Shown: in pieces, positions 29,444-64,000 of the stretch | Layout: each line of letters begins with the position of its first letter | Numbering within the stretch: the first letter of the stretch is position 1 | Source of the DNA: Amphiscolops sp. MND2022 | Lineage: Eukaryota | NCBI GenBank assembly: GCA_964187785.1 | Contig: OZ076409.1 | Span: 80,724,001 to 80,788,000, forward strand | Direction of reading: 5' to 3' | Length of the DNA stretch: 64,000 nt | Translations under genes and position numbers: made by a program | Notes under the pieces: model-generated | Database searches by the model: none | Seen by the model: the letters and a program-made list of their open reading frames with translations, nothing else | What the model was told of the DNA's origin: nothing

Positions 29444-29590
29444 TGTCGTGGGGAAAACACTACTTGCAGGGAGTTTCTATTCGATAAGCATTCATCTGAA
29501 GTATACATACAACAATTAGGTTAACATAAAAAACACAACGACATTATATAACAGTAATAATAACTACATATATATTTTACATTCATAACA
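29444..29590 (-). repeat. LTR1 (147 bp, TGTTATG...CACGACA)
   Basis: TG...CA ends; preceded on the minus strand by PPT GCAGGAAGGAG. Confidence 0.92.
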
Positions 29591-29612
29591 CTCCTTCCTG
29601 CTTCGAAAGTCT

Positions 29613-40642: not shown

Positions 40643-40715
40643 GCGTTCGTAGTCTAGTGGTAAGATGCTTGCTTTTCAACCCAGAGGGTTCGTGTACGAA
40701 CCCGTGTGTATGCGC
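40643..40715 (+). pseudogene. Degenerate tRNA-like sequence (tRNA pseudogene or SINE head) followed by T7
   Basis: A-box-like TAGTCTAGTGG; paired D stem; B-box-like GTACGAACCC; TTC at the anticodon position; mismatched anticodon and acceptor stems; T run at 40719-40725. Confidence 0.6.
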
Positions 40716-40959
40716 TAATTTTTTTACGAGTATTCCGAAGCAGAAGGTCCTCACTTTTTTCGGCACTATGAGACTTCCCCCCAGTCCTGTATTGTCTGAT
40801 GCAGGGGTTGACAATCAATTATTGGGTTTTCAACTAATTGCAATTATTGGTAGCAATTAATTGATTGGTATCGTTTTTCAATACCAATTATTGATTGACG
40901 GATGGCAATTATTGCAATTATTTAAATATATGTTAATATTACTTTAAAGATTGAAAAAA

Positions 40960-41499
40960 ATGTCTAAAAAATTGGACATTTGTCGGAAATACTTTCCAAG
41001 AAAGATACGGATAGTGATGTTTGGATTTGTGGCTTTGGAAAAGAGTTGAAGACGAGGCACGGGACTGGTTGGAAAGAACCTGTATACCCATGTAAGGGTT
41101 CAGCATGATGTTGAAAAAACGGTCCACGATAAACGGACGGCCCTAGAATTTTCTGGCGGTAAACTTATCAACAAGAAATCAAATAACATCTTCAGTTGGC
41201 CCGAATGGATTTGTTTAGAGCTGCGCCCATTCAGTTTCGTTGAGAGTTCACTCACCCAGAAGTACACAACATTACAACCAATTTCGAAAAACACTTTTAT
41301 GAAATACTTGGGATTGGTGACTCGAAAGACTGAAGAAGCTACCTGCCAAATTTGCACTTCTGTACGACGGCTTGAGTAGTGCCAGTACTCATTATGTCGG
41401 CATTATGGCATCTTTCCCAGAAGATCAAAGTCACGAAATAGCCATTTTGGCCTTCAGTCCTCCACTGGACGAGACAACAATAAATCAATTGCCGAGAAG
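40960..41499 (+). pseudogene. hAT transposase N-terminal part (BED-like finger remnant, first catalytic Asp)
   Basis: Frameshifted VWICGFGKELK...GTGWKNLYTHVRVQH; WICLELRPFSFVE; FALLYDGLSS; LAFSPPLDET. The segment normally carrying the second Asp appears deleted near 41478. Confidence 0.8.
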
Positions 41500-44400
41500 T
41501 TGGAAAAACCTATGATCGATTGTGCTGCACATAGATTCCAGTTAGCTGTGAATGATTACTTTGTAGATGTCATGTCGATCATCGTAAAAGTTCACCACAT
41601 AATGACAAAACTCAGGACCCTGAAACTTGCTGCCAAAATGAGAAATCTCTCAACTTTGCGTCCGATGACATAGATTGCCACACGGTGGGGTAGTTCATTT
41701 GCAATGATTTGTCGATACCGAGAACTTAAAGTTGTCATACAAACAAATTTCGCCTTGGAACCTATGATACTTGAGCATATGTTATCTCCTCGAGAAGATG
41801 CTAACATAGAGTCCATTTATCAAGATCTGAAAAGTTTCAATTCGGTCACTCTAGCCCTACAAAGGCACAACCTGGATCTCACATCGGTCAGACTCTTATT
41901 CGATGAGACTATGAAAAAATTCCCGCCGTTTGACCCGAATCAAAAATATTTGGTAAAAGATGCATCAATTGTGAAATCAAACCATTTTGAGAACGGAGTT
42001 GTGAAAATTATAGACAGAATGGAAGCGGATTTGACAATGGTAGAAAAACTCACTCGGTAGAAGTGGTAGAAAAATGACAGTGAATTGGTGGAAATGAAAA
42101 AACCTATGATCGATTGTGCTGCACATAGATTCCAGTTAGCTGTGAATGATTACTTTGCAGATGTCATGCCGATCATCGTAAAAGTTCACCACATAATGAC
42201 AAAACTCAGGACCCTGAAACTTGCTGCCAAAATGAGAAATCTCTCAACTTTGCGTCCGATGACATAGATTGCCACACGGTGGGGTAGTTCATTTGCAATG
42301 ATTTGTCGATACCGAGAACTTAAAGTTGTCATACAAACAAATTTCGCCTTGGAACCTACGATACTTGAGCATATGTTATCTCCTCGAGAAGATGCTAACA
42401 TAGAACCCATTTACCAAGATCTGAAAAGTTTCAATTCGGTCACTCTAGCCCTACAAAGGGACAACCTGGATCTCACATCGGTCAGACTCTTATTCGATGA
42501 GACTATGAAAAAATTCCCGCTGTTTGACCCGAATCAAAAATATTTGGTAAAAGATGCATCAATTGTGAAATCAAACCCTTTTGAGAACGGAGTTGTGAAA
42601 ATTATAGACGGAATGGAAGTGGATTTGACAATGGTAGAAAAACTCACTTGGTAGAAGTGGTAGAAAAATGACAGTGAATTAGTGGAAATGAAAAAACCTA
42701 TGATCGATTGTGCTGCTCATAGATTCCAGTTAGCTGTGAATGATTACAGTGCAGATGTCATGCCGATCATCGTAAAATTCACAACATAATGACAAAACTC
42801 AGGACCCTGAAACTTGCTGCCAAAATGAGAAAACTCTCAACTTTGCGTCCGATGACATAGATTGCCACACGGTGGGGTACTTCATTTGCAATGATTTGTC
42901 GATACCGAGAACTTAAAGTTGTCAAACAAATTTCGCCTTGGAACCTATGATACTTGAGCATATGTTATCTCCTCGAGAAGATGCTAACATAGAGTCCATT
43001 TACCAAGATCTGAAAAGTTTCAATTCGGTCACTCTAGTCCTACAAAGGGACAACCTGGATCTCACATCGGTCAGACTCTTATTCGATGAGACTATGAAAA
43101 AATTCCCGCGGTTTGACCCGAATCAAAAATATTTGGTAAAAGTTGCATCAATTGTGAAATCAAACCCTTTTGAGAACGGAGTTGTGAAAATTATAGACGG
43201 AATGGAAGCGGATTTGACAATGGTAGAAAAACTCACTCGGTAGAAGTGGTAGAAAAATGACAGTGAATTGGTGGAAATGAAAAAACCTATGATCGATTGT
43301 GCTGCATATAGATTCCAGTTAGCTGTGAATGATTACTTTGCAGATGTCATGCCGATCATCGTAAAAGTTCACCACATAATGACAAAACTCAGGACCCTGA
43401 AACTTGCTGCCAAAATGAGAAATCTGTCAACTCTTCGTCCGATGATATAGAATGCCACGCGGTGGGGTAGTTCATTTGCAATGATTAGTCGATACCGAGA
43501 ACTTAAAGTGGTCATACAAACAAATTTCGCCTTGGAACCTATGATACTTGAGCATATGTTATCTCCTCGAGAAGATGCTAACATAGAACCCATTTACCAA
43601 GATCTGAAAAGTTTCAATTCGGTCACTCTAGCCCTACAAAGGGACAACCTGGATCTCACATCGGTCAGACTCTTATTCGATGAGACTATGAAAAAATTCC
43701 CGCTGTTTGACCCGAATCAAAAATATTTGGTAAAAGATGCATCAATTGTGAAATCAAACCCTTTTGAGAACGGAGTTGTGAAACTTATAGACGGAATGGA
43801 AGTGGATTTGACAATGGTAGAAAAACTCACTTGGTAGAAGTGGTAGAAAAATGACAGTGAATTAGTGGAAATGAAAAAACCTATGATCGATTGTGCTGCT
43901 CATAGATTCCAGTTAGGTGTGAATGATTACAGTGCAGATGTCATGCCGATCATCGTAAAATTCACAACATAATGACAAAACTCAGGACCCTGAAACTTGC
44001 TGCCAAAATGAGAAAACTCTCAACTTTGCGTCCGATGACATAGATTGCCACACGGTGGGGTACTTCATTTGCAATGATTTGTCGATACCGAGAATTTAAA
44101 GTTGTCAAACAAATTTCGCCTTGGAACCTATGATACTTGAGCATATGTTATCTCCTCGAGAAGATGCTAACATAGAGTCCATTTACCAAGATCTGAAAAG
44201 TTTCAATTCGGTCACTCTAGTCCTACAAAGGGACAACCTGGATCTCACATCGGTCAGACTCTTATTCGATGAGACTATGAAAAAATTCCCGCGGTTTGAC
44301 CCGAATCAAAAATATTTGGTAAAAGTTGCATCAATTGTGAAATCAAACCCTTTTGAGAACGGAGTTGTGAAAATTATAGACGGAATGGAAGTGGATTTGA

Positions 44401-47400
44401 CAATGGTAGAAAAACTCACTTGGTAGAAGTGGTAGAAAAATGACAGTGAATTAGTGGAAATGAAAAAACCTATGATCGATTGTGCTGCACATAGATTCCA
44501 GTTAGCTGTGAATGATTACAGTGCAGATGTCATACCGGTCATCGTAAAATTCACAACATAATGACAAAATTCAGGACCTTGAAACTTGCTGCCAAAATGA
44601 GAAAACTCTCAACTTTGCGTCCGATGAAATAGATTGCCACACGGTGGGGTAGTTCATTTGCAATGATTAGTCGATACCGAGAACTTAAAGTTGTCATACA
44701 AACAAATTTCGCCTTGGAACCTATGATACTTGAGCATATGTTATCTCCTCGAGAAGATGCTTACATAGAGTCCATTTATCAAGATCTGAAAAGTTTCAAT
44801 TCGGTCACTCTAGCCCTACAAAAGGACAACCTGGATCTCACATCGGTCAGACTCTTATTCGATGAGACTATGAAAAAATTCCCGCCGTTTGACCCGAATC
44901 AAAAATATTTGGTATAAGATGCATCATTTGTGAAACCAAACCATTTTGAGAACGGAGTTGTGAAAATTATAGACGGAATGGAAGCGGATTTGACAATGGT
45001 AGAAAAACTCACTCGGTAGAAGTGGTAGAAAAATGACGGTGAATTGGTGGAAATGAAAAAACCTATGATCGATTGTGCTGCATATAGATTCGAGTTAGCT
45101 GTGAATGATTACTTTGCAGATGTCATGCCGATCATCGTAAAAGTTCACCACATAATGACAAAACTCAGGACCCTGAAACTTGCTGCCAAAATGAGAAATC
45201 TGTCAACTCTTCGTCCGATGATATAGAATGCCACGCGGTGGGGTAGTTCATTTGCAATGATTAGTCGATACCGAGAACTTAAAGTGGTCATACAAACAAA
45301 TTTCGCCTTGGAACCTATGATACTTGAGCATATGTTATCTCCTCGAGAAGATGCTAACATAGAGTCCATTTATCAAGATCTGAAAAGTTTTTATCCGGTC
45401 ACTCTAGCCCTACAAAGGGACAACCTGGATCTCACATCGGTCAGACTCTTTTTCGATGAGACTATGAAAAATTCCCGCGGTTTGACCCGAATCAAAAATA
45501 TTTGGTAAAAGATGCATCAATTGTGAAATCAAACCATTTTGAGAACGGAGTTGTGAAAATTATAGACGGAATGCAAGCGGATTTGACATTGGTAGAAAAA
45601 CTCACTCGGTAGAAGTGGTAGAAAGATGACAGTGAATTAGTGGTAATGAAAAAACCTTTGATCGATTGTGCTGCTCATAGATTCCAGTTAGCTGTGGATG
45701 ATTACAGTGCAGATGTCATGCCGATCATCGTAAAATTCACAACATAATGACAAAACTCAGGACCCTAAAACTTGCTGCCAAAATGAGAAAACTCTCAACT
45801 TTGCGTCCGATGACATAGATTGCCACACGGTTGGGTAGTTCTTTTGCAATGATTTGTCGATACCGAGAACTTAAAGTTGTCATACAAAAAATTTCGCCTT
45901 GGAACCTATGATACTTGAGCATATGTTATCTCCTCGAGAAGATGCTAACATAGAGTCCATTTACCAAGATCTGAAAAGTTTCAATTCGGTCACTCTAGCC
46001 CTACAAAGGGACAACCTGGATCTCACATCGGTCAGACTCTTATTCGATGAGACTATGAAAAAATTCCCGCGGTTTGACCCGAATCAAAAATATTTGGTAA
46101 AAGATGCATCAATTGTGAAATCAAACCCTTTTGAGAACGGAGTTGTGAAAATTATAGACGGAATGGAAGTGGATTTGACAATGGTAGAAAAACTCACTTG
46201 GTAGAAGTGGTAGAAAAATGACAGTGAATTAGTGGAAATGAAAAAACCTATGATCGATTGTGCTGCACATAGATTCCAGTTAGCTGTGAATAATTACAGT
46301 GCAGATGTAATACCGGTCATCGTAAAATTCACAACATAATGACAAAACTCAGGACCCTAAAACTTGCTGCCAAAATGAGAAAACTCTCAACTTTGCGTCC
46401 GATGACATAGATTGCCACACGGTTGGGTAGTTCTTTTGCAATGATTTGTCGATACCGAGAACTTAAAGTTGTCATACAAAAAATTTCGCCTTGGAACCTA
46501 TGATACTTGAGCATATGTTATCTCCTCGAGAAGATGCTAACATAGAGTCCATTTACCAAGATCTGAAAAGTTTCAATTCGGTCACTCTAGCCCTACAAAG
46601 GGACAACCTGGATCTCACATCGGTCAGACTCTTATTCGATGAGACTATGAAAAAATTCCCGCGGTTTGACCCGAATCAAAAATATTTGGTAAAAGATGCA
46701 TCAATTGTGAAATCAAACCCTTTTGAGAACGGAGTTGTGAAAATTATAGACGGAATGGAAGTGGATTTGACAATGGTAGAAAAACTCACTTGGTAGAAGT
46801 GGTAGAAAAATGACAGTGAATTAGTGGAAATGAAAAAACCTATGATCGATTGTGCTGCACATAGATTCCAGTTAGCTGTGAATGATTACAGTGCAGATGT
46901 TATACCGGTCATCGTAAAATTCACAACATAATGACAAAATTCAGGACCTTGAAACTTGCTGCCAAAATGAGAAAACTCTCAACTTTGCGTCCGATGACAT
47001 AGATTGCCACACGGTGGGGTAGTTCATTTGCAATTAGTCGATACCGAGAACTTAAAGTTGTCATACAAACAAATTTCGCCTTGGAACCTATGATACTTGA
47101 GCATATGTTATCTCCTCGAGAAGATGCTAACAAAGAGTCCATTTACCAAGATCTGAAAAGTTTCAATTCGGTCACTCTAGCCCTACAAAGGGACAACCTG
47201 GATCTCACATCGGTCAGACTCTTATTCGATGAGACTATGAAAAATTCCCGCGGTTTGACCCGAATCAAAAATATTTGGTATAAGATTCATCAATTGTGAA
47301 ACCAAACCATTTTGAGAACGGAGTTGTGAAAATTATAGACGGAATGAAAGCGGATTTGACAATGGTAGAAAAACTCACTCGGTAGAAGTGGTAGAAAAAT

Positions 47401-50400
47401 GACAGTGAATTGGTGGAAATGAAAAAACCTATGATCGATTGTGCTGCATATAGATTCCAGTTAGCTGTGAATGATTACTTTGCAGATGTCATGCCGATCA
47501 TCGTAAAAGTTCACCACATAATGACAAAACTCAGGACCCTGAAACTTGCTGCCAAAATGAGAAATCTCTCAACTCTTCGTCCGATGATATAGAATGCCAC
47601 GCGGTGGAGTAGTTCATTTGCAATGATTAGTCGATACCGAGAACTTAAAGTGGTCATACAAACAAATTTCGTTTTGGAACCTATGATACTTGAGCATATT
47701 ATATCTCCTCGAGAAGATGCTACAATAGAGTCCATTTATCAAGATCTGAAAAGTTTTAATCCGGTCACTCTAGCCCTACAAAGGGACAACCTGGATCTCA
47801 CATCGGTCAGACTCTTATTCGATGAGACTATGAAAAATTCCCGCGGTTTGACCCGAATCAAAAATATTTGGTAAAAGATGCATCAATTGTGAAATCAAAC
47901 CATTTTGAGAACGGAGTTGTGAAAATTATAGACGGAATGCAAGCGGATTTGACATTGGTAGAAAAACTCACTCGGTAGAAGTGGTAGAAAGATGACAGTG
48001 AATTAGTGGTAATGAAAAAACCTTTGATCGATTGTGCTGCTCATAGATTCCAGTTAGCTGTGGATGATTACAGTGCAGATGTCATGCCGATCATCGTAAA
48101 ATTCACAACATAATGACAAAACTCAGGACCCTGAAACTTGCTGCCAAAATGAGAAAACTCTCAACTTTGCGTCCGATGACATAGATTGCCACACGGTGGG
48201 GTAGTTCATTTGCAATGATTTGTCGATACCGAGAACTTAAATGTTGTCAAACAAATTTCGCCTTGGAACCTATGATACTTGAGCATATGTTATCTCCTCG
48301 AGAAGATGCTAACATAGAGTCCATTTACCAAGATCTGAAAAGTTTCAATTCGGTCACTCTAGTCCTACAAAGGGACAACCTGGATCTCACATCGGTCAGA
48401 CTCTTATTCGATGAGACTATGAAAAATTCCCGCGGTTTGACCCGAATCAAAAATATTTGGTATAAGATGCATCAATTGTGAAACCGAACCATTTTGAGAA
48501 CGGAGTTGTGAAAATTATAGACGGAATGAAAGCGGATTTGACAATGGTAGAAAAACTCACTCGGTAGAAGTGGTAGAAAAATGACAGTGAATTGGTGGAA
48601 ATGAAAAAACCTATGATCGATTGTGCTGCATATAGATTCCAGTTAGCTGTGAATGATTACTTTGCAGATGTCATGCCGATCATCGTAAAAGTTCACCACA
48701 TAATGACAAAACTCAGGACCCTGAAACTTGCTGCCAAAATGAGAAAACTCTCAACTTTGCTTCCGATGACATAGATTGCCACACGGTTGGGTAGTTCATT
48801 TGCAATGATTTGTCGATACCGAGAACTTAAAGTTGTCATACAAACAAATTTCGCCTTGGAACCTATGATACTTGAGCATATTATATCTCCTCGAGAAGAT
48901 GCTAACATAGAGTCCATTTATCAAGATCTGAAAAGTTTTAATCCGGTCACTCTAGCCCTACAAAGGGACAACCTGGATCTCACATCGGTCAGACTCTTAT
49001 TCGATGAGACTATGAAAAATTACCGCGGTTTGACCCGAATCAAAATTATTTGGTAAAAGATGCATCAAATGTGAAATCAAACCATTTTGAGAACGGAGTT
49101 GTGAAAATTATAGACGGAAGGGAAGTGGATTTGACAATGGTAGAAAAACTCACTTGGTAGAAGTGGTAGAAAAATGACAACGAATTGGTGGAAATGAAAA
49201 AACCTATGATCGATTGTGCTGCACATAGATTCCAGTTAGCTGTGAATGATTACAGTGCAGATGTCATGCCGATCATCGTAAAATTCACAACATAATGACA
49301 AAACTCAGGACCCTGAAACCTGCTGCCAAAATGAGAAAACTCTCAACTTTGCGTCCGATGATATAGAATGCCACGCGGTGGGGTAGTTCATTTGCAATGA
49401 TTAGTCGATACCGAAAACTTAAAGTGGTCATACAAACAAATTTCGTTTTGGAACCTATGATACTTGAGCATATTATATCTCCTCGAGAAGATGCTAACAT
49501 AGAGTCCATTTATCAAGATCTGAAAAGTTTTAATCCGGTCACTCTAGCCCGACAAAGGGACAACCTGGATCTCACGTCGGTCAGACTCTTATTCGATGAG
49601 ACTATGAAAAAATACCGCGGTTTGACCCGAATCAAAAATATTTGGTAAAAGATGCATCAATTGTGAAATCAAACCATTTTGAGAACGGATTTGTGAAAAT
49701 TATAGACGGAATGGAAGCGGATTTGACATTAGTAGAAAAACTCACTTGGTAGAAGTGGTAGAAAGATGACAGTGAATTAGTGGAATTGAAAAAACCTATT
49801 ATCGATTGTGCTGCAGATAGATTCCAGTTAGCTGTGAATGATTACATTGCAGATGTCATGCCGATCATCGTAAAATTCACAACATAATGACAAAACTCAG
49901 GACCCTGAAACCTGCTGCCAAAATGAGAAAACTCTCAACTTTGCGTCCGATGATATAGAATGCCACGCGGTGGGGTAGTTCATTTGCAATGATTAGTCGA
50001 TACCGAAAACTTAAAGTGGTCATACAAACAAATTTCGTTTTGGAACCTATGATACTTGAGCATATGTTATCTCCTCGAGAAGATGCTAACATAGAGTCCA
50101 TTTATCAAGATCTGAAAAGTTTCAAATCGGTCACTCTAGCCCTACAAAGGGCCAACCTGTGTCTCACATCGGTCAGACTCTTATTCGATGAGACTATGAA
50201 AAAGTTCCCGCGGTTTGACCCGAATCAAAAGTTTTTGGTAAAAGATGCATCAATTGTGAAATCAAACCTTTTTGAGAACGGATTTGTGAAAATTATAGAC
50301 GGAATGGAAGCGGATTTGACAATGGTAGAAAAACTCACTTGGTAGAAGTGGTAGAAAAATGACAATGAATTGGTGGAAATGAAAAAACCTATGATCGATT

Positions 50401-53400
50401 GTGCTGCACATAGATTCCAGTTAGCTGTGAATGATTACATTGCAGATGTCATGCCGATCATCGTAAAATTCACAACATAATGACAAAACTCAGGACCCTG
50501 AAACCTGCTGCCAAAATGAGAAAACTCTCAACTTTGCGTCCGATGATATAGAATGCCACGCGGTGGGGTAGTTCATTTGCAATGATTAGTCGATACCGAA
50601 AACTTAAAGTGGTCATACAAACAAATTTCGTTTTGGAACCTATGATACTTGAGCATATTATATCTCCTCGAAAAGATGCTAACATAGAGTCCATTTATCA
50701 AGATCTGAAAAGTTTTAATCCGGTCACTCTAGCCCTACAAAGGGACAACCTGGATCTCACATCGGTCAGACTCTTATTCGATGAGACTATGAAAAATTCC
50801 CGCGGTTTGACCCGAATCAAAAATATTTGGTAAAAGATGCATCAATTGTGAAATCAAACCATTTTGAGAACGGAGTTGTGAAAATTATAGACGGAATGCA
50901 AGCGGATTTGACATTGGTAGAAAAACTCACTCGGTAGAAGTGGTAGAAAGATGACAGTGAATTAGTGGTAATGAAAAAACCTATGATCGATTGTGCTGCT
51001 CATAGATTCCAGTTAGCTGTGGATGATTACAGTGCAGATGTCATGCCGATCATCGTAAAATTCACAACATAATGACAAAACTCAGGACCCTGAAACTTGC
51101 TGCCAAAATGAGAAAACTCAACTTTGCGTCCGATGACATAGATTGCCACACGGTTGGGTAGTTCATTTGCAATGATTAGTCGATACCGAAAACTTAAAGT
51201 GGTCATACAAACAAATTTCGTTTTGGAACCTATGATACTTGAGCATATTATATCTCCTCGAAAAGATGCTAACATAGAGTCCATTTATCAAGATCTGAAA
51301 AGTTTTAATCCGGTCACTCTAGCCCTACAAAGGGACAACCTGGATCTCACATCGGTCAGACTCTTATTCGATGAGACTATGAAAAATTCCCGCGGTTTGA
51401 CCCGAATCAAAATTATTGGGTAAAAGATGCATCAATTGTGAAATCAAACCTTTTTGAGAACGGATTTGTGAAAATTATAGACGGAATGGAAGCGGATTTG
51501 ACAATGGTAGAAAAACTCACTTGGTAGAAGTGGTAGAAAAATGACAATGAATTGGTGGAAATGAAAAAACCTATGATCGATTGTGCTGCACATAGATTCC
51601 AGTTAGCTGTGAATGATTACATTGCAGATGTCATGCCGATCATCGTAAAATTCACAACATAATGACAAAACTCAGGACCCTGAAACCTGCTGCCAAAATG
51701 AGAAAACTCTCAACTTTGCGTCCGATGATATAGAATGCCACGCGGTGGGGTAGTTCATTTGCAATGATTAGTCGATACCGAAAACTTAAAGTGGTCATAC
51801 AAACAAATTTCGTTTTGGAACCTATGATACTTGAGCATATGTTATCTCCTCGAGAAGATGCTAACATAGAGTCCATTTATCAAGATCTGAAAAGTTTCAA
51901 ATCGGTCACTCTAGCCCTACAAAGGGCCAACCTGTATCTCACATCGGTCAGACTCTTATTCTATGAGACTATGAAAAAGTTCCCGCGGTTTGACCCGAAT
52001 CAAAAGTTTTTGGTAAAAGATGCATCAATTGTGAAATCAAACCTTTTTGAGAACGGATTTGTGAAAATTATAGACGGAATGGAAGCGGATTTGACAATGG
52101 TAGAAAAACTCACTTGGTAGAAGTGGTAGAAAAATGACAATGAATTGGTGGAAATGAAAAAACCTATGATCGATTGTGCTGCACATAGATTCCAGTTAGC
52201 TGTGAATGATTACATTGCAGATGTCATGCCGATCATCGTAAAATTCACAACATAATGACAAAACTCAGGACCCTGAAACCTGCTGCCAAAATGAGAAAAC
52301 TCTCAACTTTGCGTCCGATGATATAGAATGCCACGCGGTGGGGTAGTTCATTTGCAATGATTAGTCGATACCGAAAACTTAAAGTGGTCATACAAACAAA
52401 TTTCGTTTTGGAACCTATGATACTTGAGCATATGTTATCTCCTCGAGAAGATGCTAACATAGAGTCCATTTATCAAGATCTGAAAAGTTTCAAATCGGTC
52501 ACTCTAGCCCTACAAAGGGCCAACCTGTATCTCACATCGGTCAGACTCTTATTCTATGAGACTATGAAAAAGTTCCCGCGGTTTGACCCGAATCAAAAGT
52601 TTTTGGTAAAAGATGCATCAATTGTGAAATCAAACCTTTTTGAGAACGGATTTGTGAAAATTATAGACGGAATGGAAGCGGATTTGACAATGGTAGAAAA
52701 ACTCACTTGGTAGAAGTGGTAGAAAAATGACAATGAATTGGTGGAAATGAAAAAACCTATGATCGATTGTGCTGCACATAGATTCCAGTTAGCTGTGAAT
52801 GATTACATTGCAGATGTCATGCCGATCATCGTAAAATTCATAACATAATGACAAAACTCAGGACCCTGAAACCTGCTGCCAAAATGAGAAAACTCTCAAC
52901 TTTGCGTCCGATGATATAGAATGCCACGCGGTGGGGTAGTTCATTTGCAATGATTAGTCGATACCGAAAACTTAAAGTGGTCATACAAACAAATTTCGTT
53001 TTGAAACCTATGATACTTGAGCATATTATATCTCCTCGAAAAGATGCTAACATAGAGTCCATTTATCAAGATCTGAAAAGTTTTAATCCGGTCACTCTAG
53101 CCCTACAAAGGGACAACCTGGATCTCACATCGGTCAGACTCTTATTCGATGAGACTATGAAAAATTCCCGCGGTTTGACCCGAATCAAAAATATTTGGTA
53201 AAAGATGCATCAATTGTGAAATCAAACCATTTTGAGAACGGAGTTGTGAAAATTATAGACGGAATGCAAGCGGATTTGACATTGGTAGAAAAACTCACTC
53301 GGTAGAAGTGGTAGAAAGATGACAGTGAATTAGTGGTAATGAAAAAACCTATGATCGATTGTGCTGCTCATAGATTCCAGTTAGCTGTGGATGATTACAG

Positions 53401-56400
53401 TGCAGATGTCATGCCGATCATCGTAAAATTCACAACATAATGACAAAACTCAGGACCCTGAAACTTGCTGCCAAAATGAGAAAACTCAACTTTGCGTCCG
53501 ATGACATAGATTGCCACACGGTTGGGTAGTTCATTTGCAATGATTAGTCGATACCGAAAACTTAAAGTGGTCATACAAACAAATTTCGTTTTGGAACCTA
53601 TGATACTTGAGCATATTATATCTCCTCGAAAAGATGCTAACATAGAGTCCATTTATCAAGATCTGAAAAGTTTTAATCCGGTCACTCTAGCCCTACAAAG
53701 GGACAACCTGGATCTCACATCGGTCAGACTCTTATTCGATGAGACTATGAAAAATTCCCGCGGTTTGACCCGAATCAAAATTATTGGGTAAAAGATGCAT
53801 CAATTGTGAAATCAAACCTTTTTGAGAACGGATTTGTGAAAATTATAGACGGAATGGAAGCGGATTTGACAATGGTAGAAAAACTCACTTGGTAGAAGTG
53901 GTAGAAAAATGACAATGAATTGGTGGAAATGAAAAAACCTATGATCGATTGTGCTGCACATAGATTCCAGTTAGCTGTGAATGATTACATTGCAGATGTC
54001 ATGCCGATCATCGTAAAATTCACAACATAATGACAAAACTCAGGACCCTGAAACCTGCTGCCAAAATGAGAAAACTCTCAACTTTGCGTCCGATGATATA
54101 GAATGCCACGCGGTGGGGTAGTTCATTTGCAATGATTAGTCGATACCGAAAACTTAAAGTGGTCATACAAACAAATTTCGTTTTGGAACCTATGATACTT
54201 GAGCATATTATATCTCCTCGAAAAGATGCTAACATAGAGTCCATTTATCAAGATCTGAAAAGTTTTAATCCGGTCACTCTAGCCCTACAAAGGGACAACC
54301 TGGATCTCACATCGGTCAGACTCTTATTCGATGAGACTATGAAAAATTCCCGCGGTTTGACCCGAATCAAAAATATTTGGTAAAAGATGCATCAATTGTG
54401 AAATCAAACCATTTTGAGAACGGAGTTGTGAAAATTATAGACGGAATGCAAGCGGATTTGACATTTGTAGAAAAACTCACTCGGTAGAAGTGGTAGAAAG
54501 ATGACAGTGAATTAGTGGTAATGAAAAAACCTATGATCGATTGTGCTGCTCATAGATTCCAGTTAGCTGTGGATGATTACAGTGCAGATGTCATGCCGAT
54601 CATCGTAAAATTCACAACATAATGACAAAACTCAGGACCCTGAAACTTGCTGCCAAAATGAGAAAACTCTCAACTTTGCGTCCGATGACATAGATTGCCA
54701 CACGGTGGGGTACTTTATTTGCAATGATTTGTCGATACCGAGAATTTAAAGTTGTCAAACAAATTTCGCCTTGGAACCTATGATACTTGAGCATATGTTA
54801 TCTCCTCGAGAAGATGCTAACATAGAGTCCATTTACCAAGATCTGAAAAGTTTCAATTCGGTCACTCTAGTCCTACAAAGGGACAACCTGGATCTCACAT
54901 CGGTCAGACTCTTATTCGATGAGACTATGAAAAAATTCCCGCGGTTTGACCCGAATCAAAAATATTTGGTAAAAGTTGCATCAATTGTGAAATCAAACCC
55001 TTTTGAGAACGGAGTTGTGAAAATTATAGACGGAATGGAAGTGGATTTGACAATGGTAGAAAAACTCACTTGGTAGAAGTGGTAGAAAAATGACAGTGAA
55101 TTAGTGGAATTGAAAAAACCTATTATCGATTGTGCTGCAGATAGATTCCAGTTAGCTGTGAATGATTACAGTGCAGATGTCATGCCGATCATCGTAAAAT
55201 TCACAACATAACGACAAAACTCAGGACCCTGAAACTTGCTGCCAAAATGAGAAAACTCTCAACTTTGCGTCCGATGACATAGATTGCCACACGGTGGGGT
55301 AGTTCATTTGCAATGATTAGTCGATACCGAGAACTTAAAGTTGTCATACAAACAATTTTCGCCTTGGAACCTATGATACTTGAGCATATGTTATCTCCTC
55401 GAGAAGATGCTAACATAGAGTCCATTTATCAAGATCTGAAAAGTTTCAAATCGGTCACTCTAGCCCTACAAAGGGCCAACCTGGATCTCACATCGGTCAG
55501 ACTCTTATTCGATGAGACTATGAAAAAGTTCCCGCGGTTTGACCCGAATCAAAAGTTTTTGGTAAAAGATGCATCAATTGTGAAATCAAACCTTTTTGAG
55601 AACGGAGTTGTGAAAATTATAGACGGAATGGAAGCGGATTTGACAATGGTAGAAAAACTCACTTGGTAGAAGTGGTAGAGAAATGACAATGAATTGGTGG
55701 AAATGAAAAAACCTATGATCGATTGTGCTGCACATAGATCATAGATTCCAGTTAGCTGTGAATGATTACATTGCAGATGTCATGCCGATCATCGTAAAAT
55801 TCACAACATAATGACAAAACTCAGGACCCTGAAACCTGCTGCCAAAATGAGAAAACTCTCAACTTTGCGTCCGATGACATAGATTGCCACACGGTTGGGT
55901 AGTTCATTTGCAATGATTTGTCGATACCGAGAACTTAAAGTTGTCATACAAAAAATTTAGCCTTGGAACCTATGATACTTGAGCATTTTATATCTCCTCG
56001 AGAAGATGCTAACATAGAGTCCATTTATCAAGATCTGAAAAGTTTTAATCCGGTCACTCTAGCCCTACAATGGGACAACCTGGATCTCACATCGGTCAGA
56101 CTCTTATTCGATGAGACTATGAAAAATTACCGCGGTTTGACCCGAATCAAAATTATTTGGTAAAAGATGCATCAAATGTGAAATCAAACCATTTTGAGAA
56201 CGGAGTTGTGAAAATTATAGACGGAATGGAAGTGGATTTGACAATGGTAGAAAAACTCACTTGGTAGAAGTGGTAGAAAAATGACAGTGAATTAGTGGAA
56301 TTGAAAAAACCTATTATCGATTGTGCTGCAGATAGATTCCAGTTAGCTGTGAATGATTACAGTGCAGATGTCATGCCGATCATCGTAAAATTCACAACAT

Positions 56401-59400
56401 AACGACAAAACTCAGGACCCTGAAACTTGCTGCCAAAATGAGAAAACTCTCAACTTTGCGTCCGATGACATAGATTGCCACACGGTGGGGTAGTTCATTT
56501 GCAATGATTAGTCGATACCGAGAACTTAAAGTTGTCATACAAACAATTTTCGCCTTGGAACCTATGATACTTGAGCATATGTTATCTCCTCGAGAAGATG
56601 CTAACATAGAGTCCATTTATCAAGATCTGAAAAGTTTCAAATCGGTCAATCTAGCCCTACAAAGGGCCAACCTGGATCTCACATCGGTCAGACTCTTATT
56701 CGATGAGACTATGAAAAAGTTCCCGCGGTTTGACCCGAATCAAAAGTTTTTGGTAAAAGATGCATCAATTGTGAAATCAAACCTTTTTGAGAACGGAGTT
56801 GTGAAAATTATAGACGGAATGGAAGCGGATTTGACAATGGTAGAAAAACTCACTGGGTAGAAGTGGTAGAAAGATGACAGTGAATTAGTGGAATTGAAAA
56901 AACCTATTATCGATTGTGCTGCAGATAGATTCCAGTTAGCTGTGAATGATTACAGTGCAGATGTCATGCCGATCATCGTAAAATTCACAACATAACGACA
57001 AAACTCAGGACCCTGAAACTTGCTGCCAAAATGAGAAAACTCTCAACTTTGCGTCCGATGACATAGATTGCCACACGGTGGGGTAGTTCATTTGCAATGA
57101 TTAGTCGATACCGAGAACTTAAAGTTGTCATACAAACAATTTTCGCCTTGGAACCTATGATACTTGAGCATATGTTATCTCCTCGAGAAGATGCTAACAT
57201 AGAGTCCATTTATCAAGATCTGAAAAGTTTCAAATCGGTCACTCTAGCCCTACAAAGGGCCAACCTGGATCTCACATCGGTCAGACTCTTATTCGATGAG
57301 ACTATGAAAAAGTTCCCGCGGTTTGACCCGAATCAAAAGTTTTTGGTAAAAGATGCATCAATTGTGAAATCAAACCTTTTTGAGAACGGAGTTGTGAAAT
57401 TTATAGACGGAATGGAAGCGGATTTGACAATGGTAGAAAAACTCACTTGGTAGAAGTGGTAGAAAAATGACAATGAATTGGTGGAAATGAAAAAAACCTA
57501 TGATCGATTGTGCTGCACATAGATTCCAGTTAGCTGTGAATGATTACATTGCAGATGTCATGCCGATCATCGTAAAATTCACAACATAATGACAAAACTC
57601 AGGACCCTGAAACCTGCTGCCAAAATGAGAAAACTCTCAACTTTGCGTCCGATGATATAGAATGCCACGCGGTGGGGTAGTTCATTTGCAATGATTAGTC
57701 GATACCGAAAACTTAAAGTGGTCATACAAACAAATTTCGTTTTGGAACCTATGATACTTGAGCATATTATATCTCCTCGAGAAGATGCTAACATAGCGTC
57801 CATTTATCAAGATCTGAAAAGTTTTTAATCCGGTCACTCTAGCCCTACAAAGGGACAACCTGGATCTCACATCGGTCAGACTCTTATTCGATGAAACTAT
57901 GAAAAATTACCGCGGTTTGACCCGAATCAAAAATATTCGGTAAAAGATGCATCAATTGTGAAATCAAACCCTTTTGGGAACGGAGTTGTGAAAATTATAG
58001 ACGGAATGGAAGCGGATTTGACATTCGTAGAAAAACTCACTTGGTAGAAGTGGTATAAAGATGACAGTGAATTAGTGGAATTGAAAAAACCTATGATCGA
58101 TTGTGCTGCAGATAGATTCCAGTTAGCTGTGAATGATTACAGTGCAGATGTCATGCCGATCATCGTAAAATTCACAACATAATGACAAAACTCAGGACCC
58201 TGAAACCTGCTGCCAAAATGAGAAAACTCTCAACATTGCGTCCGATGATATAGAATGCCACGCGGTGGGGTAGTTCATTTGCAATGATTAGTCGATACCG
58301 AGAACTTAAAGTGGTCATACAAACAAATTTCGTTTTGGAACCTATGATACTTGAGCATATTATATCTCCTCGAGAAGATGCTAACATAGAGTCCATTTAT
58401 CAAGATCTGAAAAGTTTTAATCCGGTCACTCTAGCCCTACAAAGGGACAACCTGGATCTCACATCGGTCAGACTCTTATTCGATGAGACTATGAAAAATT
58501 CCCGCGGTTTGACCCGAATCAAAAATATTTGGTAAAAGATGCATCAATTGTGAAATCAAACCCTTTTGAGAACGGAGTTGTGAAAATTATAGACGGAATG
58601 GAAGCGGATTTGACAATGGTAGAAAAACTCACTTGGTAGAAGTGGTAGAAAAATGACAATGAATTGGTGGAAATTAAAAAACCTATGATCGATTGTGCTG
58701 CACATAGATTCCAGTTAGCTGTGAATGATTACATTGCAGATGTCATGCCGATCATCGTAAAAGTTCACCACATAATGACAAAACTCAGGACCCTGAAGCT
58801 TGCTGCCAAAATGAGAAATCTCTCAACTCTGCGTCCGATGATATAGAATGCCACGCGGTGGGGTAGTTTATTTGCAATGATTAGTCGATACCGAGAACTT
58901 AAAGTGGTCATACAAACAAATTTCGTTTTGGAACCTATGATACTTGAGCATATTATATCTCCTCGAGAAGATGCTAACATAGAGTCCATTTATCAAGATC
59001 TGAAAAGTTTTAATCCGGTCACTCTAGCCCTACAAAGGGACAACCTGGATCTCACATCGGTCAGACTCTTATTCGATGAGACTATGAAAAATTCCCGCGG
59101 TTTGACCCGAATCAAAAATATTCGGTAAAAGATGCATCAATTGTGAAATCAAACCCTTTTGGGAACGGAGTTGTGAAAATTATAGACGGAATGGAAGCGG
59201 ATTTGACATTCGTAGAAAAACTCACTTGGTAGAAGTGGTATAAAGATGACAGTGAATTAGTGGAATTGAAAAAACCTATGATCGATTGTGCTGCAGATAG
59301 ATTCCAGTTAGCTGTGAATGATTACAGTGCAGATGTCATGCCGATCATCGTAAAATTCACAACATAATGACAAAACTCAGGACCCTGAAACCTGCTGCCA

Positions 59401-61638
59401 AAATGAGAAAACTCTCAACATTGCGTCCGATGATATAGAATGCCACGCGGTGGGGTAGTTCATTTGCAATGATTAGTCGATACCGAGAACTTAAAGTGGT
59501 CATACAAACAAATTTCGTTTTGGAACCTATGATACTTGAGCATATTATATCTCCTCGAGAAGATGCTAACATAGAGTCCATTTATCAAGATCTGAAAAGT
59601 TTTAATCCGGTCACTCTAGCCCTACAAAGGGACAACCTGGATCTCACATCGGTCAGACTCTTATTCGATGAGACTATGAAAAATTCCCGCGGTTTGACCC
59701 GAATCAAAAATATTTGGTAAAAGATGCATCAATTGTGAAATCAAACCCTTTTGAGAACGGAGTTGTGAAAATTATAGACGGAATGGAAGCGGATTTGACA
59801 ATGGTAGAAAAACTCACTTGGTAGAAGTGGTAGAAAAATGACAATGAATTGGTGGAAATTAAAAAACCTATGATCGATTGTGCTGCACATAGATTCCAGT
59901 TAGCTGTGAATGATTACATTGCAGATGTCATGCCGATCATCGTAAAAGTTCACCACATAATGACAAAACTCAGGACCCTGAAGCTTGCTGCCAAAATGAG
60001 AAATCTCTCAACTCTGCGTCCGATGATATAGAATGCCACGCGGTGGGGTAGTTTATTTGCAATGATTAGTCGATACCGAGAACTTAAAGTGGTCATACAA
60101 ACAAATTTCGTTTTGGAACCTATGATACTTGAGCATATTATATCTCCTCGAGAAGATGCTAACATAGAGTCCATTTATCAAGATCTGAAAAGTTTTAATC
60201 CGGTCACTCTAGCCCTACAAAGGGACAACCTGGATCTCACATCGGTCAGACTCTTATTCGATGAGACTATGAAAAAATTCCCGCCGTTTGACCCGAATCA
60301 AAATTATTTGGTAAAAGATGCATCAATTGTGAAATCAAACCGTTTTGAGAACGGAGTTGTGAACATTATAGACGGAATGAAAGCGTATTTGACAATGGTA
60401 GAAAAACTCACTTGGTAGAAGTGGTAGAAAAATGACAGTGAATTGGTGGAAATGAAAATACCTATAATCGATTGTGCTGCACATAGATTCCAGTTAGCTC
60501 TGAAAGATTACATTGCAGATTTCATGCCGATCATCGTGAAAATTCACCACATAATGACAGAATTCAGGCCCTGAAACTTGCTGCCAAAATGAGAAATCTC
60601 TCAACTCTGCGTCCGATGATATAGAATGCCACGCGGTGGGGTGGTTCATTTGCAATGATTAGTCGATACCGAGAACTTAAAGTTGTCATACAAACAATTT
60701 TCGCCTTGGAACCTATGATACTTGAGCATATGTTATCTCCTCGAGAAGATGCTAACATAGAGTCCATTTATCAAGATCTGAAAATTTTTAATTTGGTCAC
60801 TCTAGCCCTACAAAGGGACAATCTGGATCTCACATCGGTCAGACTCTTATTCGATGAGACTATGAAAAATTCCCGCGGTTTGACCCGAATCAAAAATATT
60901 TGGTAAAAGATGCATCAATTGTGAAATCAAACCATTTTGAGAACGGAGTTGTGAACATTATAGACGGAATGCAAGCGGATTTGACAATGGTAGAAAAACT
61001 CACTTGGTAGAAGTGGTAGAAAAATGACAGTGAATTGGTGGAAATGAAAAAACCTATGATCGATTGTGCTGCGCATAGATTCCAGTTAGCTCTGAATGAT
61101 TACATTGCAGATGTCATGCCGATCATTGTGAAAATTCACCACATAGTGACAAAACTCAGGGCTTGAAACTTGCTGCCAAAATGAGAAATCTCTCAACTCT
61201 GCGTCCGATGATATAGAATGCCACGCGGTGGGGTAGTTCATTTGCAATGATTAGTCGATACCGAAAACTTAAAGTGGTCATACAAACAAATTTCGTTTTG
61301 GAACCTATGATACTTGAGCATATTATATCTTCTTGAGAAGATGCTAACATAGAGTCCATTTATCAAGATCTGAAAAGTTTTAATCCGGTCACTCTAGCCC
61401 TACAAAGGGACAACCTGGATCTCACATCGGTCAGACTCTTATTCGATGAGACTATGAAAAATTACCGCGGTTTGACCCGAATCAAAAATATTTGGTAAAA
61501 GATGCATCAATTGTGAAATCAAACCATTTTGAGAACGGAGTTGTGAAAATTATAGACGGAATGGAAGCGGATTTGACATTGGTAGAAAAACTCACTTGGT
61601 AGAAGTGGTAGAAAAATGACAGTGAATTGGTTGAATTG
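41500..61638 (+). repeat. Satellite array: 34 tandem ~592-bp units of the transposase core
   Basis: 34 occurrences of the TAGATTC(C/G)AG landmark from ~41532 to ~61076 at ~589-600-bp spacing. Each unit covers IDCAAHRFQLAV...ATRWGS...LTMVEKLT with shared stop codons. Confidence 0.97.
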
Positions 61639-61895
61639 CGTGACGACGGTGACACTGAAGATTTTGCTTGGAAGATTTTACAGAAACGCGCCAAGAACAC
61701 TGTCGATTCTGGTTACTGGAATTTGCAGTTTTTGAAGCCTACTAGCAATCTTCTCGAACGGTTTTTATTTATGCTGGCTTCGCTTTGAATGACCTCCGCC
61801 AAAGCCTGACCCCTTTACACCTCGAGCAGCAATTGTTCCTAAACGCCATTAAGAAATTTTTGGGTACCGAGACAGTTACGGTTTTACAGGACTAG
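61639..61895 (+). pseudogene. hAT transposase C-terminus (catalytic Glu / dimerisation region)
   Basis: DDGDTEDFAWKILQKR...KPTSNLLERFF...LNDLRQSLTPLHLEQQLFL, matching the hAT PTS..ER.FS motif. Confidence 0.88.
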
Positions 61896-64000
61896 TGATG
61901 ATAAATTGTGTTCGTTTTAAGATTTTAGAAAGTTTTGTTTTTTTGATCATTATTTTCAGTTTGTTGATTTATGCCAATAATTGCGATTATTGATTGATGA
62001 GGAAACCAATTAACAATTATTGATTGGCAAGCTTTTTGGAATCAATTAATTGCAATGAATAATTGCCTAGTCCTGGTCTGATGGGACACCCCTTTTTCGG
62101 CTTTGAGAGACTTTTTTTAAATTTTTTAATGTCCCCCAAGGGTGCTCCGTTCAATTTGTTTGCATTAGAACGAATGTTAAAAAATCCCAAAGGGTCCCTT
62201 TCAGATTTTTCGGCATTGAGACTTAAAATTTCCCCCTTTTTTCGAAAGTTTTTTAAAGACTCCAAAGGGTCCCCTCAAATTCGTTTTCACCGAAGCCTCT
62301 CCCCAATTTATACTAGAAACAAAACGTTTTGGGAGCGTTAGCGACTCCTCAAGGTTTTCGGCACTATGCGACTTACCGGAGACCATCAAAAAAAATTCGA
62401 AAAATTTTTTCCCTCCATTTTCTGTTTTTTTTTTAAGGTTTGTCGTTGAGAAAGATGAGTTTTTTGCTCTTTCCAGTCGGGGAAGAATGGCTTTCGAGAC
62501 TTATGCGTATCCTTTCGGGTATTTTTCGGCGCTGTAAAATTGATGACATTTTAATGTCCTTTTACCCTTGGTTCTCCGTATAATATTGCTTATTTGGTTT
62601 TCTTCAAAAGTTCGCAAGTGTTTGCGAAGCACGGCTTCGCCTCTGTGTAAACTTTGTCCTTTAAATTTTGAAAACTCACTGTGTATGATGATAGTATATG
62701 AACTCCAATGAATTTGCTATGCGATGATCCAATTTGTTCCAATTTTTTCATATTGTTATTTGAGTTTTCAAAATCCTTATACCTTTAATTGCGTTTAATA
62801 TTGACAAGACTTCATCAAAGTTCAAGTGTGCAGCCAATAGTTCAGATTTTGTTCCAAGTAATGCTGATCTAAAAGTCTTCATGGCAATGTTTGGAGTAAC
62901 ATTGATATTCCTGTTGGCATTCCTTGATAAAACCAAAGTGGAGGTTTAGTCAATGGACAGTGTCGCAGTTTGTAAGTATGCGTTTCTTTTCTGTGAGAAT
63001 TTCGGAGATTTCTGTGCGGTTGTATAAACAGTTGTCCCTTTGTTACTGTTGTAACTTGAAGAAAAATAAATCAGCATGAAACAAAGCAGCTGTAAGTTCG
63101 GATTGCAATAAATTCTATCCTTTGACTTGAAACATTGGCCTCTTGATATATGTGAAGCTCAGGAGCTGGGGAACCGAGCTTCAAATACTACATATTATGT
63201 CGACATCGTTACTGCCAAGGTTTACGAAAAATGAATTACCAATGTCTTGACATTAATTGCATTAATTTTCTTTATTATTTGCCCTAATTGAAAATTCTAA
63301 TTATTGGTTTTGAAGACACCCGGATAACTTCGAAGCGTTTTCACCCTCCACCTTTGAAAATTTTTGAAAAATTTGTAAACAAGATGAGGAAAAGCCAATA
63401 TTCGTTGACTTTCTGTTGAAATTTCTTCATTGTCCAATATTCCGCTGCAAAAGTTTAGTCATAATTACCCACGTTGGGACAACTTAACGTCAATCCCGAA
63501 ATTTCCTACTGGTAGAAAATCAATTTGCTTCATTATGAAGAAATCTAGGCAGTAAATTGCAGGAATAGCATGTGATTTACTGATATCTCTATGCAAGCCG
63601 GGATATTACTAAACCACTGAAATTGAAGGTCTGTAATTTGGTCATCTAACTCTCCTAGCAACTGTTTTGGCAAAAACCGAGTGTTTTCACTACTCGATAC
63701 CCAGTACGCTCAATTAATCAATTAATCGCCGAGAGGTTGGAATGGAGTCACAACAAAAGTTCTCTGATTTCACCTGTGGTGTAGGGCTCAAGTATATGGC
63801 ATTACTGTTTGGTTTGACTAACCAGTTTCGTGGAATATGTATTTTAGAAGTTTTGAACTTTTTTGTAATGACCCCAAATGACTAGTCCAAATTTTTTACA
63901 GCCTAAAACTCCAAATTGTCCATTTTTCGATCATTAAATTGGCATCTTTGTTCAACTTTTGAAGTTTTTGTGATTTTCATGTTTCAGGACCTGGCATGAA

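What the first reader, a model, noticed from the sequence alone, without database searches (positions are those of the whole stretch)
40802..62075. A 20-kb satellite born inside a single hAT transposon that still has both TIRs and its TSD
Seen: one element bounded by CAGG-type TIRs and a perfect 8-bp TSD (GTCTGATG). A unique transposase N-terminus and a unique C-terminus flank 34 head-to-tail copies of a ~592-bp internal transposase segment. Removing 33 units restores a ~1.7-kb defective hAT. Established: TE-derived satellites exist, but usually come from TIR/LTR or MITE sequence and often lose their parental context. Inference: this locus preserves the birth of a satellite from transposase coding DNA with the progenitor intact around it. 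The 21-kb unit might still be mobilised in trans or act as a source of transposase-silencing small RNA.
Basis: partly seen in the sequence, partly recalled or inferred. Interest (0 to 1): 0.85.

Follow-up and report, generated by a model that had tools for sequence, protein, structure and literature searches.

The report
Tandem array grown inside one hAT transposon
One dead copy of a small cut-and-paste (hAT) transposon has had a 592-bp piece of its own enzyme gene copied head-to-tail 34 times between its intact ends; it is a clean, still-changing example of a known way that tandem repeats arise, but it occurs only at this one locus.

Summary
Window 40802-62075 is one hAT-superfamily element with family-typical ends and a perfect 8-bp target-site duplication (GTCTGATG). 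Unique 5' and 3' transposase parts flank 34.0 head-to-tail copies of a ~592-bp coding segment.

The units are 92-100% identical (mean 95.6%). They group together against all other family copies, evolve neutrally, and are joined at a 3-bp ATG microhomology.

A separate contig-level ENA assembly matches the element with no mismatches. A second ENA contig carries a variant of the array with two fewer units between units 11 and 24, so the array is real and still changing by unit gain and loss.

- The family's normal length is only ~1.85 kb, encoding a ~506-aa BED/hAT transposase. This copy also has a private 103-bp deletion that removes the second catalytic Asp.
- The unit-unit junction occurs nowhere else in the 1.07-Gb assembly. 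This is a single-locus array (a proto-satellite), not a dispersed satellite, and nothing shows it was ever mobilised.
- No RNA or small-RNA data were available.

TE-internal expansions, including a satellite derived from a transposase domain (Chenopodium CACTA), are already described. I therefore class this as a new member of a known kind, of modest interest. An earlier first-reader note reports another hAT-derived array elsewhere in this genome; I did not check it.

The parts
40591..40793 (+). Left half of the tRNA-derived SINE copy that was the insertion target
   Evidence: About 93-94% identical to thousands of paralogs. In two paralogs this half continues directly into the right flank.
40794..40801 (.). 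Left copy of the 8-bp target-site duplication, GTCTGATG
40802..40815 (+). 5' terminal inverted repeat, CAGGGGTTGACAAT (13 of 14 bases match the family form CAGGGGTTGGCAAT)
40816..40914 (+). 5' subterminal region with four exact CAATTATTG motifs, likely transposase-binding repeats
   Evidence: Six of the eight exact matches in the 64-kb window lie in the two subterminal regions; 1.2 matches are expected by chance.
40960..41502 (+). Unique N-terminal transposase remnant: start codon at 40960, BED-type zinc finger, first catalytic Asp; broken by stops and frameshifts
   Evidence: aligns to residues 1 to ~224 of the intact family reading frame.
41477..41478 (+). Junction of a private 103-bp deletion (CAA microhomology) that removes the second catalytic Asp motif and shifts the frame
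   Evidence: absent from the C12, C9 and C5 copies.
41503..61638 (+). 34 head-to-tail units of ~592 bp (589-598), derived from transposase residues ~225-422 (CxxH motif, RW motif, insertion domain)
61639..61895 (+). Unique C-terminal transposase remnant (hAT dimerisation region with the catalytic Glu motif) ending at the TAG stop, 61893-61895
61975..62022 (.). 3' subterminal CAATTATTG motifs (one on each strand)
62062..62075 (+). 3' terminal inverted repeat, ATTGCCTAGTCCTG (12 of 14 bases match the family form ATTGCCAAGCCCTG)
62076..62083 (.). Right copy of the 8-bp target-site duplication, GTCTGATG
62084..62290 (+). Right half of the same SINE copy

Best explanation
A low-copy, compact hAT transposon (normal length ~1.85 kb, ~506-aa BED/DDE transposase) inserted once into a SINE copy and made the GTCTGATG duplication. 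Later, in place, a non-homologous repair or replication error joined two ATG triplets 594 bp apart in its coding region, producing a tandem duplication of residues ~225-422. Once two copies existed, out-of-register exchange, slippage and gene conversion between units added and removed units and blocks of units, up to the present 34. The units carry no coding or other detectable constraint. The array is a neutral, locus-bound proto-satellite inside an immobile, dead element, and its unit number still varies. Shown directly: single insertion, in-place origin, junction microhomology, neutrality, uniqueness of the locus, and a structural variant. Inferred: the molecular process behind the first duplication and the later expansions.
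For: hAT identity: 8-bp duplications at six copies and CAG-type ends. A profile of the family and its homologs hits Hermes transposase at E = 4e-14. Homologs carry the Dimer_Tnp_hAT and zf-BED Pfam domains above cut-off. Asp, Asp, Glu, Trp and CxxH are conserved. Single insertion: perfect duplication; the two flanks are adjoining halves of one SINE copy; and the private substitution load is equal in the 5' part (17 of 420 sites) and the 3' part (12 of 293). In-place origin: other copies hold the segment once, continuous with the same flanks, and the units form one group with 16 fixed differences. Junction: the internal junctions read GAAATG followed by AAAAAACC, joining ancestral ...GAAATG|TGTGAC and ...AAGATG|AAAAAACC at a shared ATG. 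Stepwise growth: identical pairs 17=21, 18=19 and 29=31; nearest neighbours at lags 1, 2, 3, 4, 6 and 18; and the most divergent units (33 and 34) at the 3' edge. Neutrality: variable sites by codon position are 45/44/48 (p = 0.92), and the longest open frame is 128 aa. Reality and turnover: ENA contig ctg183949 is identical to the window over 40447-64000 but differs upstream at ~40335. ENA contig ctg155609 (12.1 kb) runs 11, 12', 12, 13-16, 19', 20, 23', a 644-bp unit, then 24-33, with 0-1 differences in the shared units. Locus-bound: the junction 31-mer is found only in this array.
Against: No raw reads could be laid, so the count of 34 rests on two assemblies that probably share their reads. 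The minor ENA contig could in principle be an assembler bubble, although it carries sequence variants absent from the main contig. Per-unit divergence (about 3% shared plus 3% private) is somewhat higher than the ~4% private load of the unique parts, and I cannot explain the difference. About 24 bp around the insertion site is absent from the two SINE paralogs examined, and no exact empty site was found.
Confidence: 0.85

Rival explanations
1. Assembly artefact: the array is much shorter in reality and the assembler inflated it.
For: Three unit pairs are identical. Long tandem arrays are error-prone to assemble. No reads could be laid.
Against: 31 of the 34 units are distinct sequences with a nested pattern of shared variants, which assemblers do not invent. 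A second contig-level assembly that differs from the window upstream is identical over the whole element. A variant contig shows the same units in a slightly different order.
Confidence: 0.04
2. A burst rather than stepwise growth: a circle excised from the 592-bp segment was copied by rolling-circle replication and reintegrated by homology, creating most units at once. Later exchange only reshuffled them.
For: Every internal junction is the same, as expected from a single founding event. Most units differ from the unit consensus by a similar 2-4%.
Against: The unit tree is hierarchical, with many young sister pairs and multi-unit blocks rather than a star shape. The variant contig shows that gain and loss of one to a few units is happening now. 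Identical junctions are equally expected under stepwise unequal exchange.
Confidence: 0.08
3. The array is kept because it is useful, for example as a source of small RNAs that silence this hAT family or as a chromatin or structural element.
For: 34 sense copies of transposase sequence would be a rich template if transcribed from both strands. The genome holds many apparently intact relatives of this transposase.
Against: No RNA run was found for this organism. Substitutions are spread evenly over codon positions. Unit number varies freely. The family is low-copy and old, and only one intact reading frame was found. Relatives are under 55% identical in protein, too distant for RNA-guided silencing by this array.
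Confidence: 0.05
4. The direction is reversed: a pre-existing satellite was captured by, or inserted into, a hAT element.
For: MITEs and Helitrons are known to capture tandem repeats (PMC12628747).
Against: The unit is colinear with the family's transposase gene and continues in frame into both unique parts. Every other copy has it exactly once. The junction exists nowhere else in the genome.
Confidence: 0.01

Closest known systems
Chenopodium CficCl-61-40 satellite, derived from the tnp2 transposase domain of the CACTA element Jozin (PMC7320549)
   Same: The monomer comes from transposase coding DNA of a cut-and-paste transposon, and arrays start beside the parental transposase remnant.
   Different: That monomer is ~40 bp and forms the major satellite at many loci in a plant. 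Here the monomer is 592 bp, from a hAT element, at one locus, with both element ends and the target-site duplication preserved.
MITEs with internal tandem arrays (Xenopus Xstir composites; bivalve MITE-like elements with satellite cores), as reviewed in PMC12628747
   Same: A tandem array lies between terminal inverted repeats, with microhomology proposed as the seed and unequal exchange as the mode of growth.
   Different: Those cores are non-coding, the elements are multi-copy and mobile, and their arrays are usually short. This array is coding-derived, 34 units long, and was never transposed.
Tetris and DINE-TR1 in Drosophila (PMC4079207), and retrotransposon-derived tandem repeats in Lathyrus (PMC7004042)
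   Same: A tandem repeat internal to a transposable element acts as the seed of satellite DNA.
   Different: Their sources are terminal repeats, central non-coding repeats or untranslated regions, and the arrays have spread to many loci.
Tandem accumulations of hAT MITEs at Atlantic cod inversion breakpoints (PMC12368964)
   Same: hAT-derived sequence in tandem arrangement.
   Different: Those are whole elements arranged in tandem, not an internal segment amplified inside a single element.
Satellites derived from LINE ORF2 (listed in PMC9659126)
   Same: The monomers derive from the coding sequence of a transposable element.
   Different: They come from retrotransposons, and the parental element context is not preserved.

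Membership tests
hAT superfamily DNA transposon | 8-bp target-site duplication | tested here: met
   Perfect 8-bp duplications flank the window copy and five other family copies.
hAT superfamily DNA transposon | Short terminal inverted repeats of the CAG... type | tested here: met
   The family ends are CAGGGGTTGGCAAT and CAGGGCTTGGCAAT (13 of 14 bases complementary). The window copy differs from these by 1 and 2 substitutions. Subterminal CAATTATTG motifs are enriched.
hAT superfamily DNA transposon | Transposase with a BED finger, an RNase-H-like DDE core with a Trp-bearing insertion domain, and a C-terminal hAT dimerisation domain | tested here: met
   A profile of the family's intact reading frame plus 23 homologs hits Hermes transposase at E = 4e-14. 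Homologs pass the Pfam cut-offs for PF05699 and PF02892. Asp, Asp, Glu, Trp and CxxH are conserved. Scanned on its own, the family reading frame gives only a sub-threshold zf-BED hit, and the window's stop-free pieces give nothing.
hAT superfamily DNA transposon | This copy encodes a working transposase (is autonomous) | tested here: not met
   A 103-bp frameshifting deletion removes the second catalytic Asp. There are stops and frameshifts, and the longest open frame is 128 aa.
Satellite DNA | Long head-to-tail array of one monomer | tested here: met
   34.0 units of ~592 bp, 20.1 kb in total.
Satellite DNA | High genomic abundance or presence at many loci | tested here: not met
   The junction 31-mer (up to 3 mismatches) gives 32 hits in 1.07 Gb, all in this array. 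Elsewhere the unit occurs once per family copy.
Satellite DNA | Concerted evolution and turnover by unequal exchange | tested here: met
   16 substitutions are fixed across the array. There are identical and near-identical unit pairs at several lags, and a variant contig with a different unit complement.
Satellite DNA | Heterochromatic or centromeric packaging | not testable with these tools
   No chromatin data were available.
Tandem array derived from a transposable element (proto-satellite inside a TE) | Monomer homologous to part of a TE, with single-copy parental forms present in the same genome | tested here: met

The most novel reading that the evidence does not exclude
This compact hAT clade may be unusually prone to internal tandem duplication, perhaps through template switching during repair of excision gaps. 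If so, transposase coding DNA would be a recurrent seed of long-monomer arrays in this genome, and the window would show the most advanced and still polymorphic case. Besides this array I saw four others: a ~1.7-kb unit repeated about 4.6 times in a second family member, a partial duplication in a third, a ~240-bp triplication in a related family, and a 2.5-kb triplication that cuts a related transposase gene. An earlier first-reader note reports a further hAT-derived array, which I did not check.
Probability: 0.2. Interest if true: 0.5.

Novelty: new member of a known kind. Interest (0 to 1): 0.3.

Why it matters
Most satellites derived from transposable elements are recognised only after the parental context has decayed, so the founding step has to be guessed. 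Here every stage can be read from one locus: the target site, both element ends, the exact microhomology junction of the first duplication, single-copy parental forms elsewhere in the genome, a nested unit genealogy, and a second allele-like version with a different unit count. That makes it a good teaching and calibration case for models of how tandem arrays start and grow, and a possible marker for measuring unequal-exchange rates. It does not change what is known about how satellites arise.

Tried and rejected
- Tandem Repeats Finder found nothing because its longest period is 500. I used an anchor search instead.
- Pfam on the window's stop-free pieces gave no hit. The family was identified through an intact copy and a profile.
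- Both sequencing-run searches found only four DNA runs from one study and no RNA run, so expression is untested.
- The search for an exact paralogous empty site (28-mer, up to 3 mismatches) found none. SINE paralogs run continuously across the site but lack about 24 bp of locus-specific sequence.
- A whole-genome search with PF05699 did not reveal other tandem clusters among the 150 candidates scored, so the array in the earlier first-reader note was not located.
- The 4.7-kb C2 copy is not an autonomous form. Its extra 2.9 kb is a nested element with reverse-transcriptase-like and GIY-YIG-like reading frames.
- Rejected readings: a satellite captured by the transposon, and an assembly artefact (see rival explanations).
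- A look-up for a right-flank reading frame in the ENA assembly found nothing on record.
Full report
**Observation.** A 24-nt anchor taken from the repeat occurs 34 times between 41505 and 61049, with spacings of 589-598 bp. Tandem Repeats Finder reported nothing only because its longest period is 500. Aligning the 34 units gives a mean pairwise identity of 95.6% (range 92-100%) with clear blocks of closer units. The element begins with CAGGGGTTGACAAT at 40802 and ends with ATTGCCTAGTCCTG at 62075. GTCTGATG lies directly outside both ends. The 5' part (40802-41502) and the 3' part (61639-62075) each occur once in the element. With 33 units removed, 1,732 bp remain.

**What the element is.** The window's genome (1.07 Gb) holds a low-copy family of the same element.
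- About 1.85-kb copies lie on C12 (20.67 Mb), C10 and C5. Copies on C2 and C9 are enlarged by nested insertions, and a copy at C12 48.97 Mb is truncated at its 3' end.
- Five of these copies end at the same terminal bases as the window copy. Each has its own perfect 8-bp duplication (GCGAGGGT, CCTGAGAT, CTACAGAT, GTTGAAGG, TTTGGCAC).
- The family ends are CAGGGGTTGGCAAT and CAGGGCTTGGCAAT.
- The C9 copy keeps an open 508-aa frame, so ~1.85 kb is the normal size of this compact element rather than a deletion relic.

The protein evidence is as follows.
- Alone, the C9 protein gives only a sub-threshold zf-BED hit.
- Its homologs (31-46% identity, about 500 aa, from oomycetes, diatoms and unnamed assemblies) carry Dimer_Tnp_hAT and zf-BED above the Pfam cut-offs.
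- A profile of 24 of these proteins hits Hermes transposase at E = 4e-14.
- The alignment conserves the two Asp residues, the Glu, the Trp and the CxxH motif.
- CAATTATTG motifs are concentrated in both subterminal regions: 6 of the 8 exact matches in the 64-kb window, against 1.2 expected by chance.

Membership in the hAT superfamily is therefore well supported.

**State of the window copy.**
- The repeated unit corresponds to residues ~225-422 of the transposase (CxxH motif, RW motif, insertion domain).
- Just upstream, at about 41477/41478, the window copy has a private 103-bp deletion with CAA microhomology. It removes the second catalytic Asp motif and shifts the frame.
- Stops and frameshifts are frequent, and the longest open frame in the whole element is 128 aa.

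**Evidence for a single insertion.**
- The 8/8 duplication sits at boundaries that were defined independently by the other copies.
- The two flanks are the adjoining halves of one tRNA-derived SINE copy. In two paralogs the matching stretches adjoin.
- The two unique parts carry the same private substitution load: 17 of 420 sites and 12 of 293 sites, about 4% each.

There is one caveat. About 24 bp around the site is not present in the two SINE paralogs examined, and no exact paralogous empty site exists.

**In-place origin and mechanism.**
- In every other family copy the 592-bp segment occurs once, directly continuous with the same 5' and 3' parts.
- In a tree with four other family copies, the 34 units form one group. 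At 16 alignment columns no unit has the family's base.
- All internal junctions read ...GAAATG followed by AAAAAACC.... In the other family copies the two contexts are ...GAAATG|TGTGAC... and ...AAGATG|AAAAAACC.... The founding duplication therefore joined two ATG triplets about 594 bp apart, using a 3-bp microhomology. This is the signature of a non-homologous repair or replication error, not of recombination between repeats.

Later growth was stepwise.
- Units 17 and 21, 18 and 19, and 29 and 31 are identical. Units 16, 20 and 22 differ from one another by 1-3 positions.
- Nearest neighbours lie at lags of 1, 2, 3, 4, 6 and 18 units.
- The most divergent units (33 and 34) sit at the 3' edge, where exchange is least effective.
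- Units differ from their own consensus by 2.95% on average, and that consensus differs from the family by 5.3%. The common ancestor of today's units is therefore clearly younger than the insertion.
- Variable sites fall evenly on the three codon positions (45/44/48, p = 0.92), so nothing selects on the coding sense.

**Is the array real, and is it still changing?** Read laying failed on a filter. However, gene look-ups led to a contig-level ENA assembly (ERZ25074608).
- Its 275-kb contig ctg183949 is identical to the window from 40447 to 64000. It departs from the window upstream, at about 40335, so it is not simply the same sequence record.
- A second contig from the same assembly, ctg155609 (12.1 kb, lying entirely inside the array), reads: end of unit 10, 11, a second 12-like unit, 12, 13, 14, 15, 16, a 19-like unit (7 differences), 20, a 23-like unit, a 644-bp unit, then 24 to 32 and the start of 33. 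The shared units differ by 0-1 positions.
- Between units 11 and 24 this version has ten units where the window has twelve. It differs exactly in the region where the window has its identical unit pairs.
- I read this contig as a second allele or haplotype produced by recent unequal exchange. The labels in the contig names (204x and 30x) may be coverages, but I could not verify that.

**Spread.** The unit-unit junction 31-mer (up to 3 mismatches) occurs 32 times in the whole assembly, always in this array. The amplified element has therefore not been transposed, and the unit has not seeded arrays elsewhere. By the usual criteria of abundance and many loci this is not yet a satellite. It is a single 20-kb array.

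**Function.** I found no evidence for any function. No RNA run is available. The family is small and old: copies differ by 4-12%, and only one intact reading frame was seen. Related hAT lineages with intact frames are under 55% identical in protein. The small-RNA and trans-mobilisation ideas remain untested speculation.

**Comparison with what is known.** Reviews state that monomers derived from transposable elements come mostly from terminal repeats, LTRs and untranslated regions. They also note that central parts of DNA transposons and short internal arrays can be sources (PMC9659126, PMC12628747). A satellite derived from a transposase domain of a CACTA element is documented in Chenopodium (PMC7320549). 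The present case adds a hAT example with a long coding monomer and a fully preserved parental frame. It is a new member of a known kind.

**Recurrence.** In passing I saw other internal tandem duplications in this clade.
- A ~1.7-kb unit repeated about 4.6 times in a family member on C12.
- A partial duplication in the C5 copy.
- A ~240-bp triplication in a related family on C1.
- A 2,531-bp triplication with TGTC microhomology that cuts a related transposase gene on C1675.

An earlier first-reader note (s1-152043) mentions another hAT-derived array, which I did not locate or check. Whether compact hAT elements are enriched for such events, or the genome simply makes many tandem duplications, needs a controlled genome-wide count.

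Noticed in passing
G000 C12:22601904-22619229 (L046 and L053): A second member of the same hAT family, about 17 kb long. It holds a different internal tandem array, at about C12:22602628-22610463, of ~1.62-1.70-kb units repeated about 4.6 times at 96-98% identity. Each unit holds element positions 118-1126 plus ~700 bp of foreign sequence. There is also ~8.6 kb of other inserted DNA. The flanking 8-mers match at 6 of 8 positions (CTCCAAAC and CTACAAAA).
   Followed up: partly
G000 C5:8348682-8351447 (L048): This family copy (2,766 bp, target-site duplication CTACAGAT) has a partial internal tandem duplication covering the end of the 5' part plus unit positions 1-284.
   Followed up: partly
G000 C1:38383399-38385644 (L067 3399-5644): A related hAT element (about 65-78% DNA identity) has three copies of a ~240-bp C-terminal coding segment and a 745-bp tandem repeat.
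   Followed up: partly
G000 C1675:22232-29820 (L070): Three tandem copies of a 2,531-bp segment, 99.2-100% identical, joined at TGTC microhomology. One breakpoint lies inside the reading frame of a related compact hAT transposase (an intact 503-aa copy at 28804-30270).
   Followed up: partly
G000 C9:26546857-26552753 (L049): This is the only family copy found with an intact 508-aa transposase frame (L049 1254-2780, minus strand). A 4,033-bp insertion containing a 239-aa reading frame that I did not identify separates its 5' tip from the rest.
   Followed up: partly
window 40783-40801 and 62065-62083: The left flank reads CCCCAGTCCTG, then TATT, then the target-site duplication. The element's 3' end reads GCCTAGTCCTG, then the duplication. 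The two 11-mers match at 9 of 11 positions, including a base private to this copy's 3' end. This could be chance (roughly 1% by my estimate) or a trace of repair or conversion at insertion. It remains unexplained.
   Followed up: partly
window 40591-40793 and 62084-62290: The insertion target is a tRNA-derived SINE with thousands of ~93-94% identical copies and a tail of ~40-100-bp sub-repeats. ARAGORN does not call its head as a tRNA.
   Followed up: partly
L045 1624-4530 (G000 C2:60348123-60351029): The C2 family copy contains a 2.9-kb nested insertion whose reading frames look reverse-transcriptase-like and GIY-YIG-like, suggesting a Penelope-like element. This is judged by eye from the translations only.
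   Followed up: no
window ~40317-40358: The ENA contig ctg183949 and the window diverge (an indel) at about 40335.
   Followed up: no
G000, many loci: The genome holds many related compact hAT lineages with intact 503-536-aa frames in several same-length copies. Their closest named homologs are from oomycetes and diatoms, so the clade looks recently active here.
   Followed up: no
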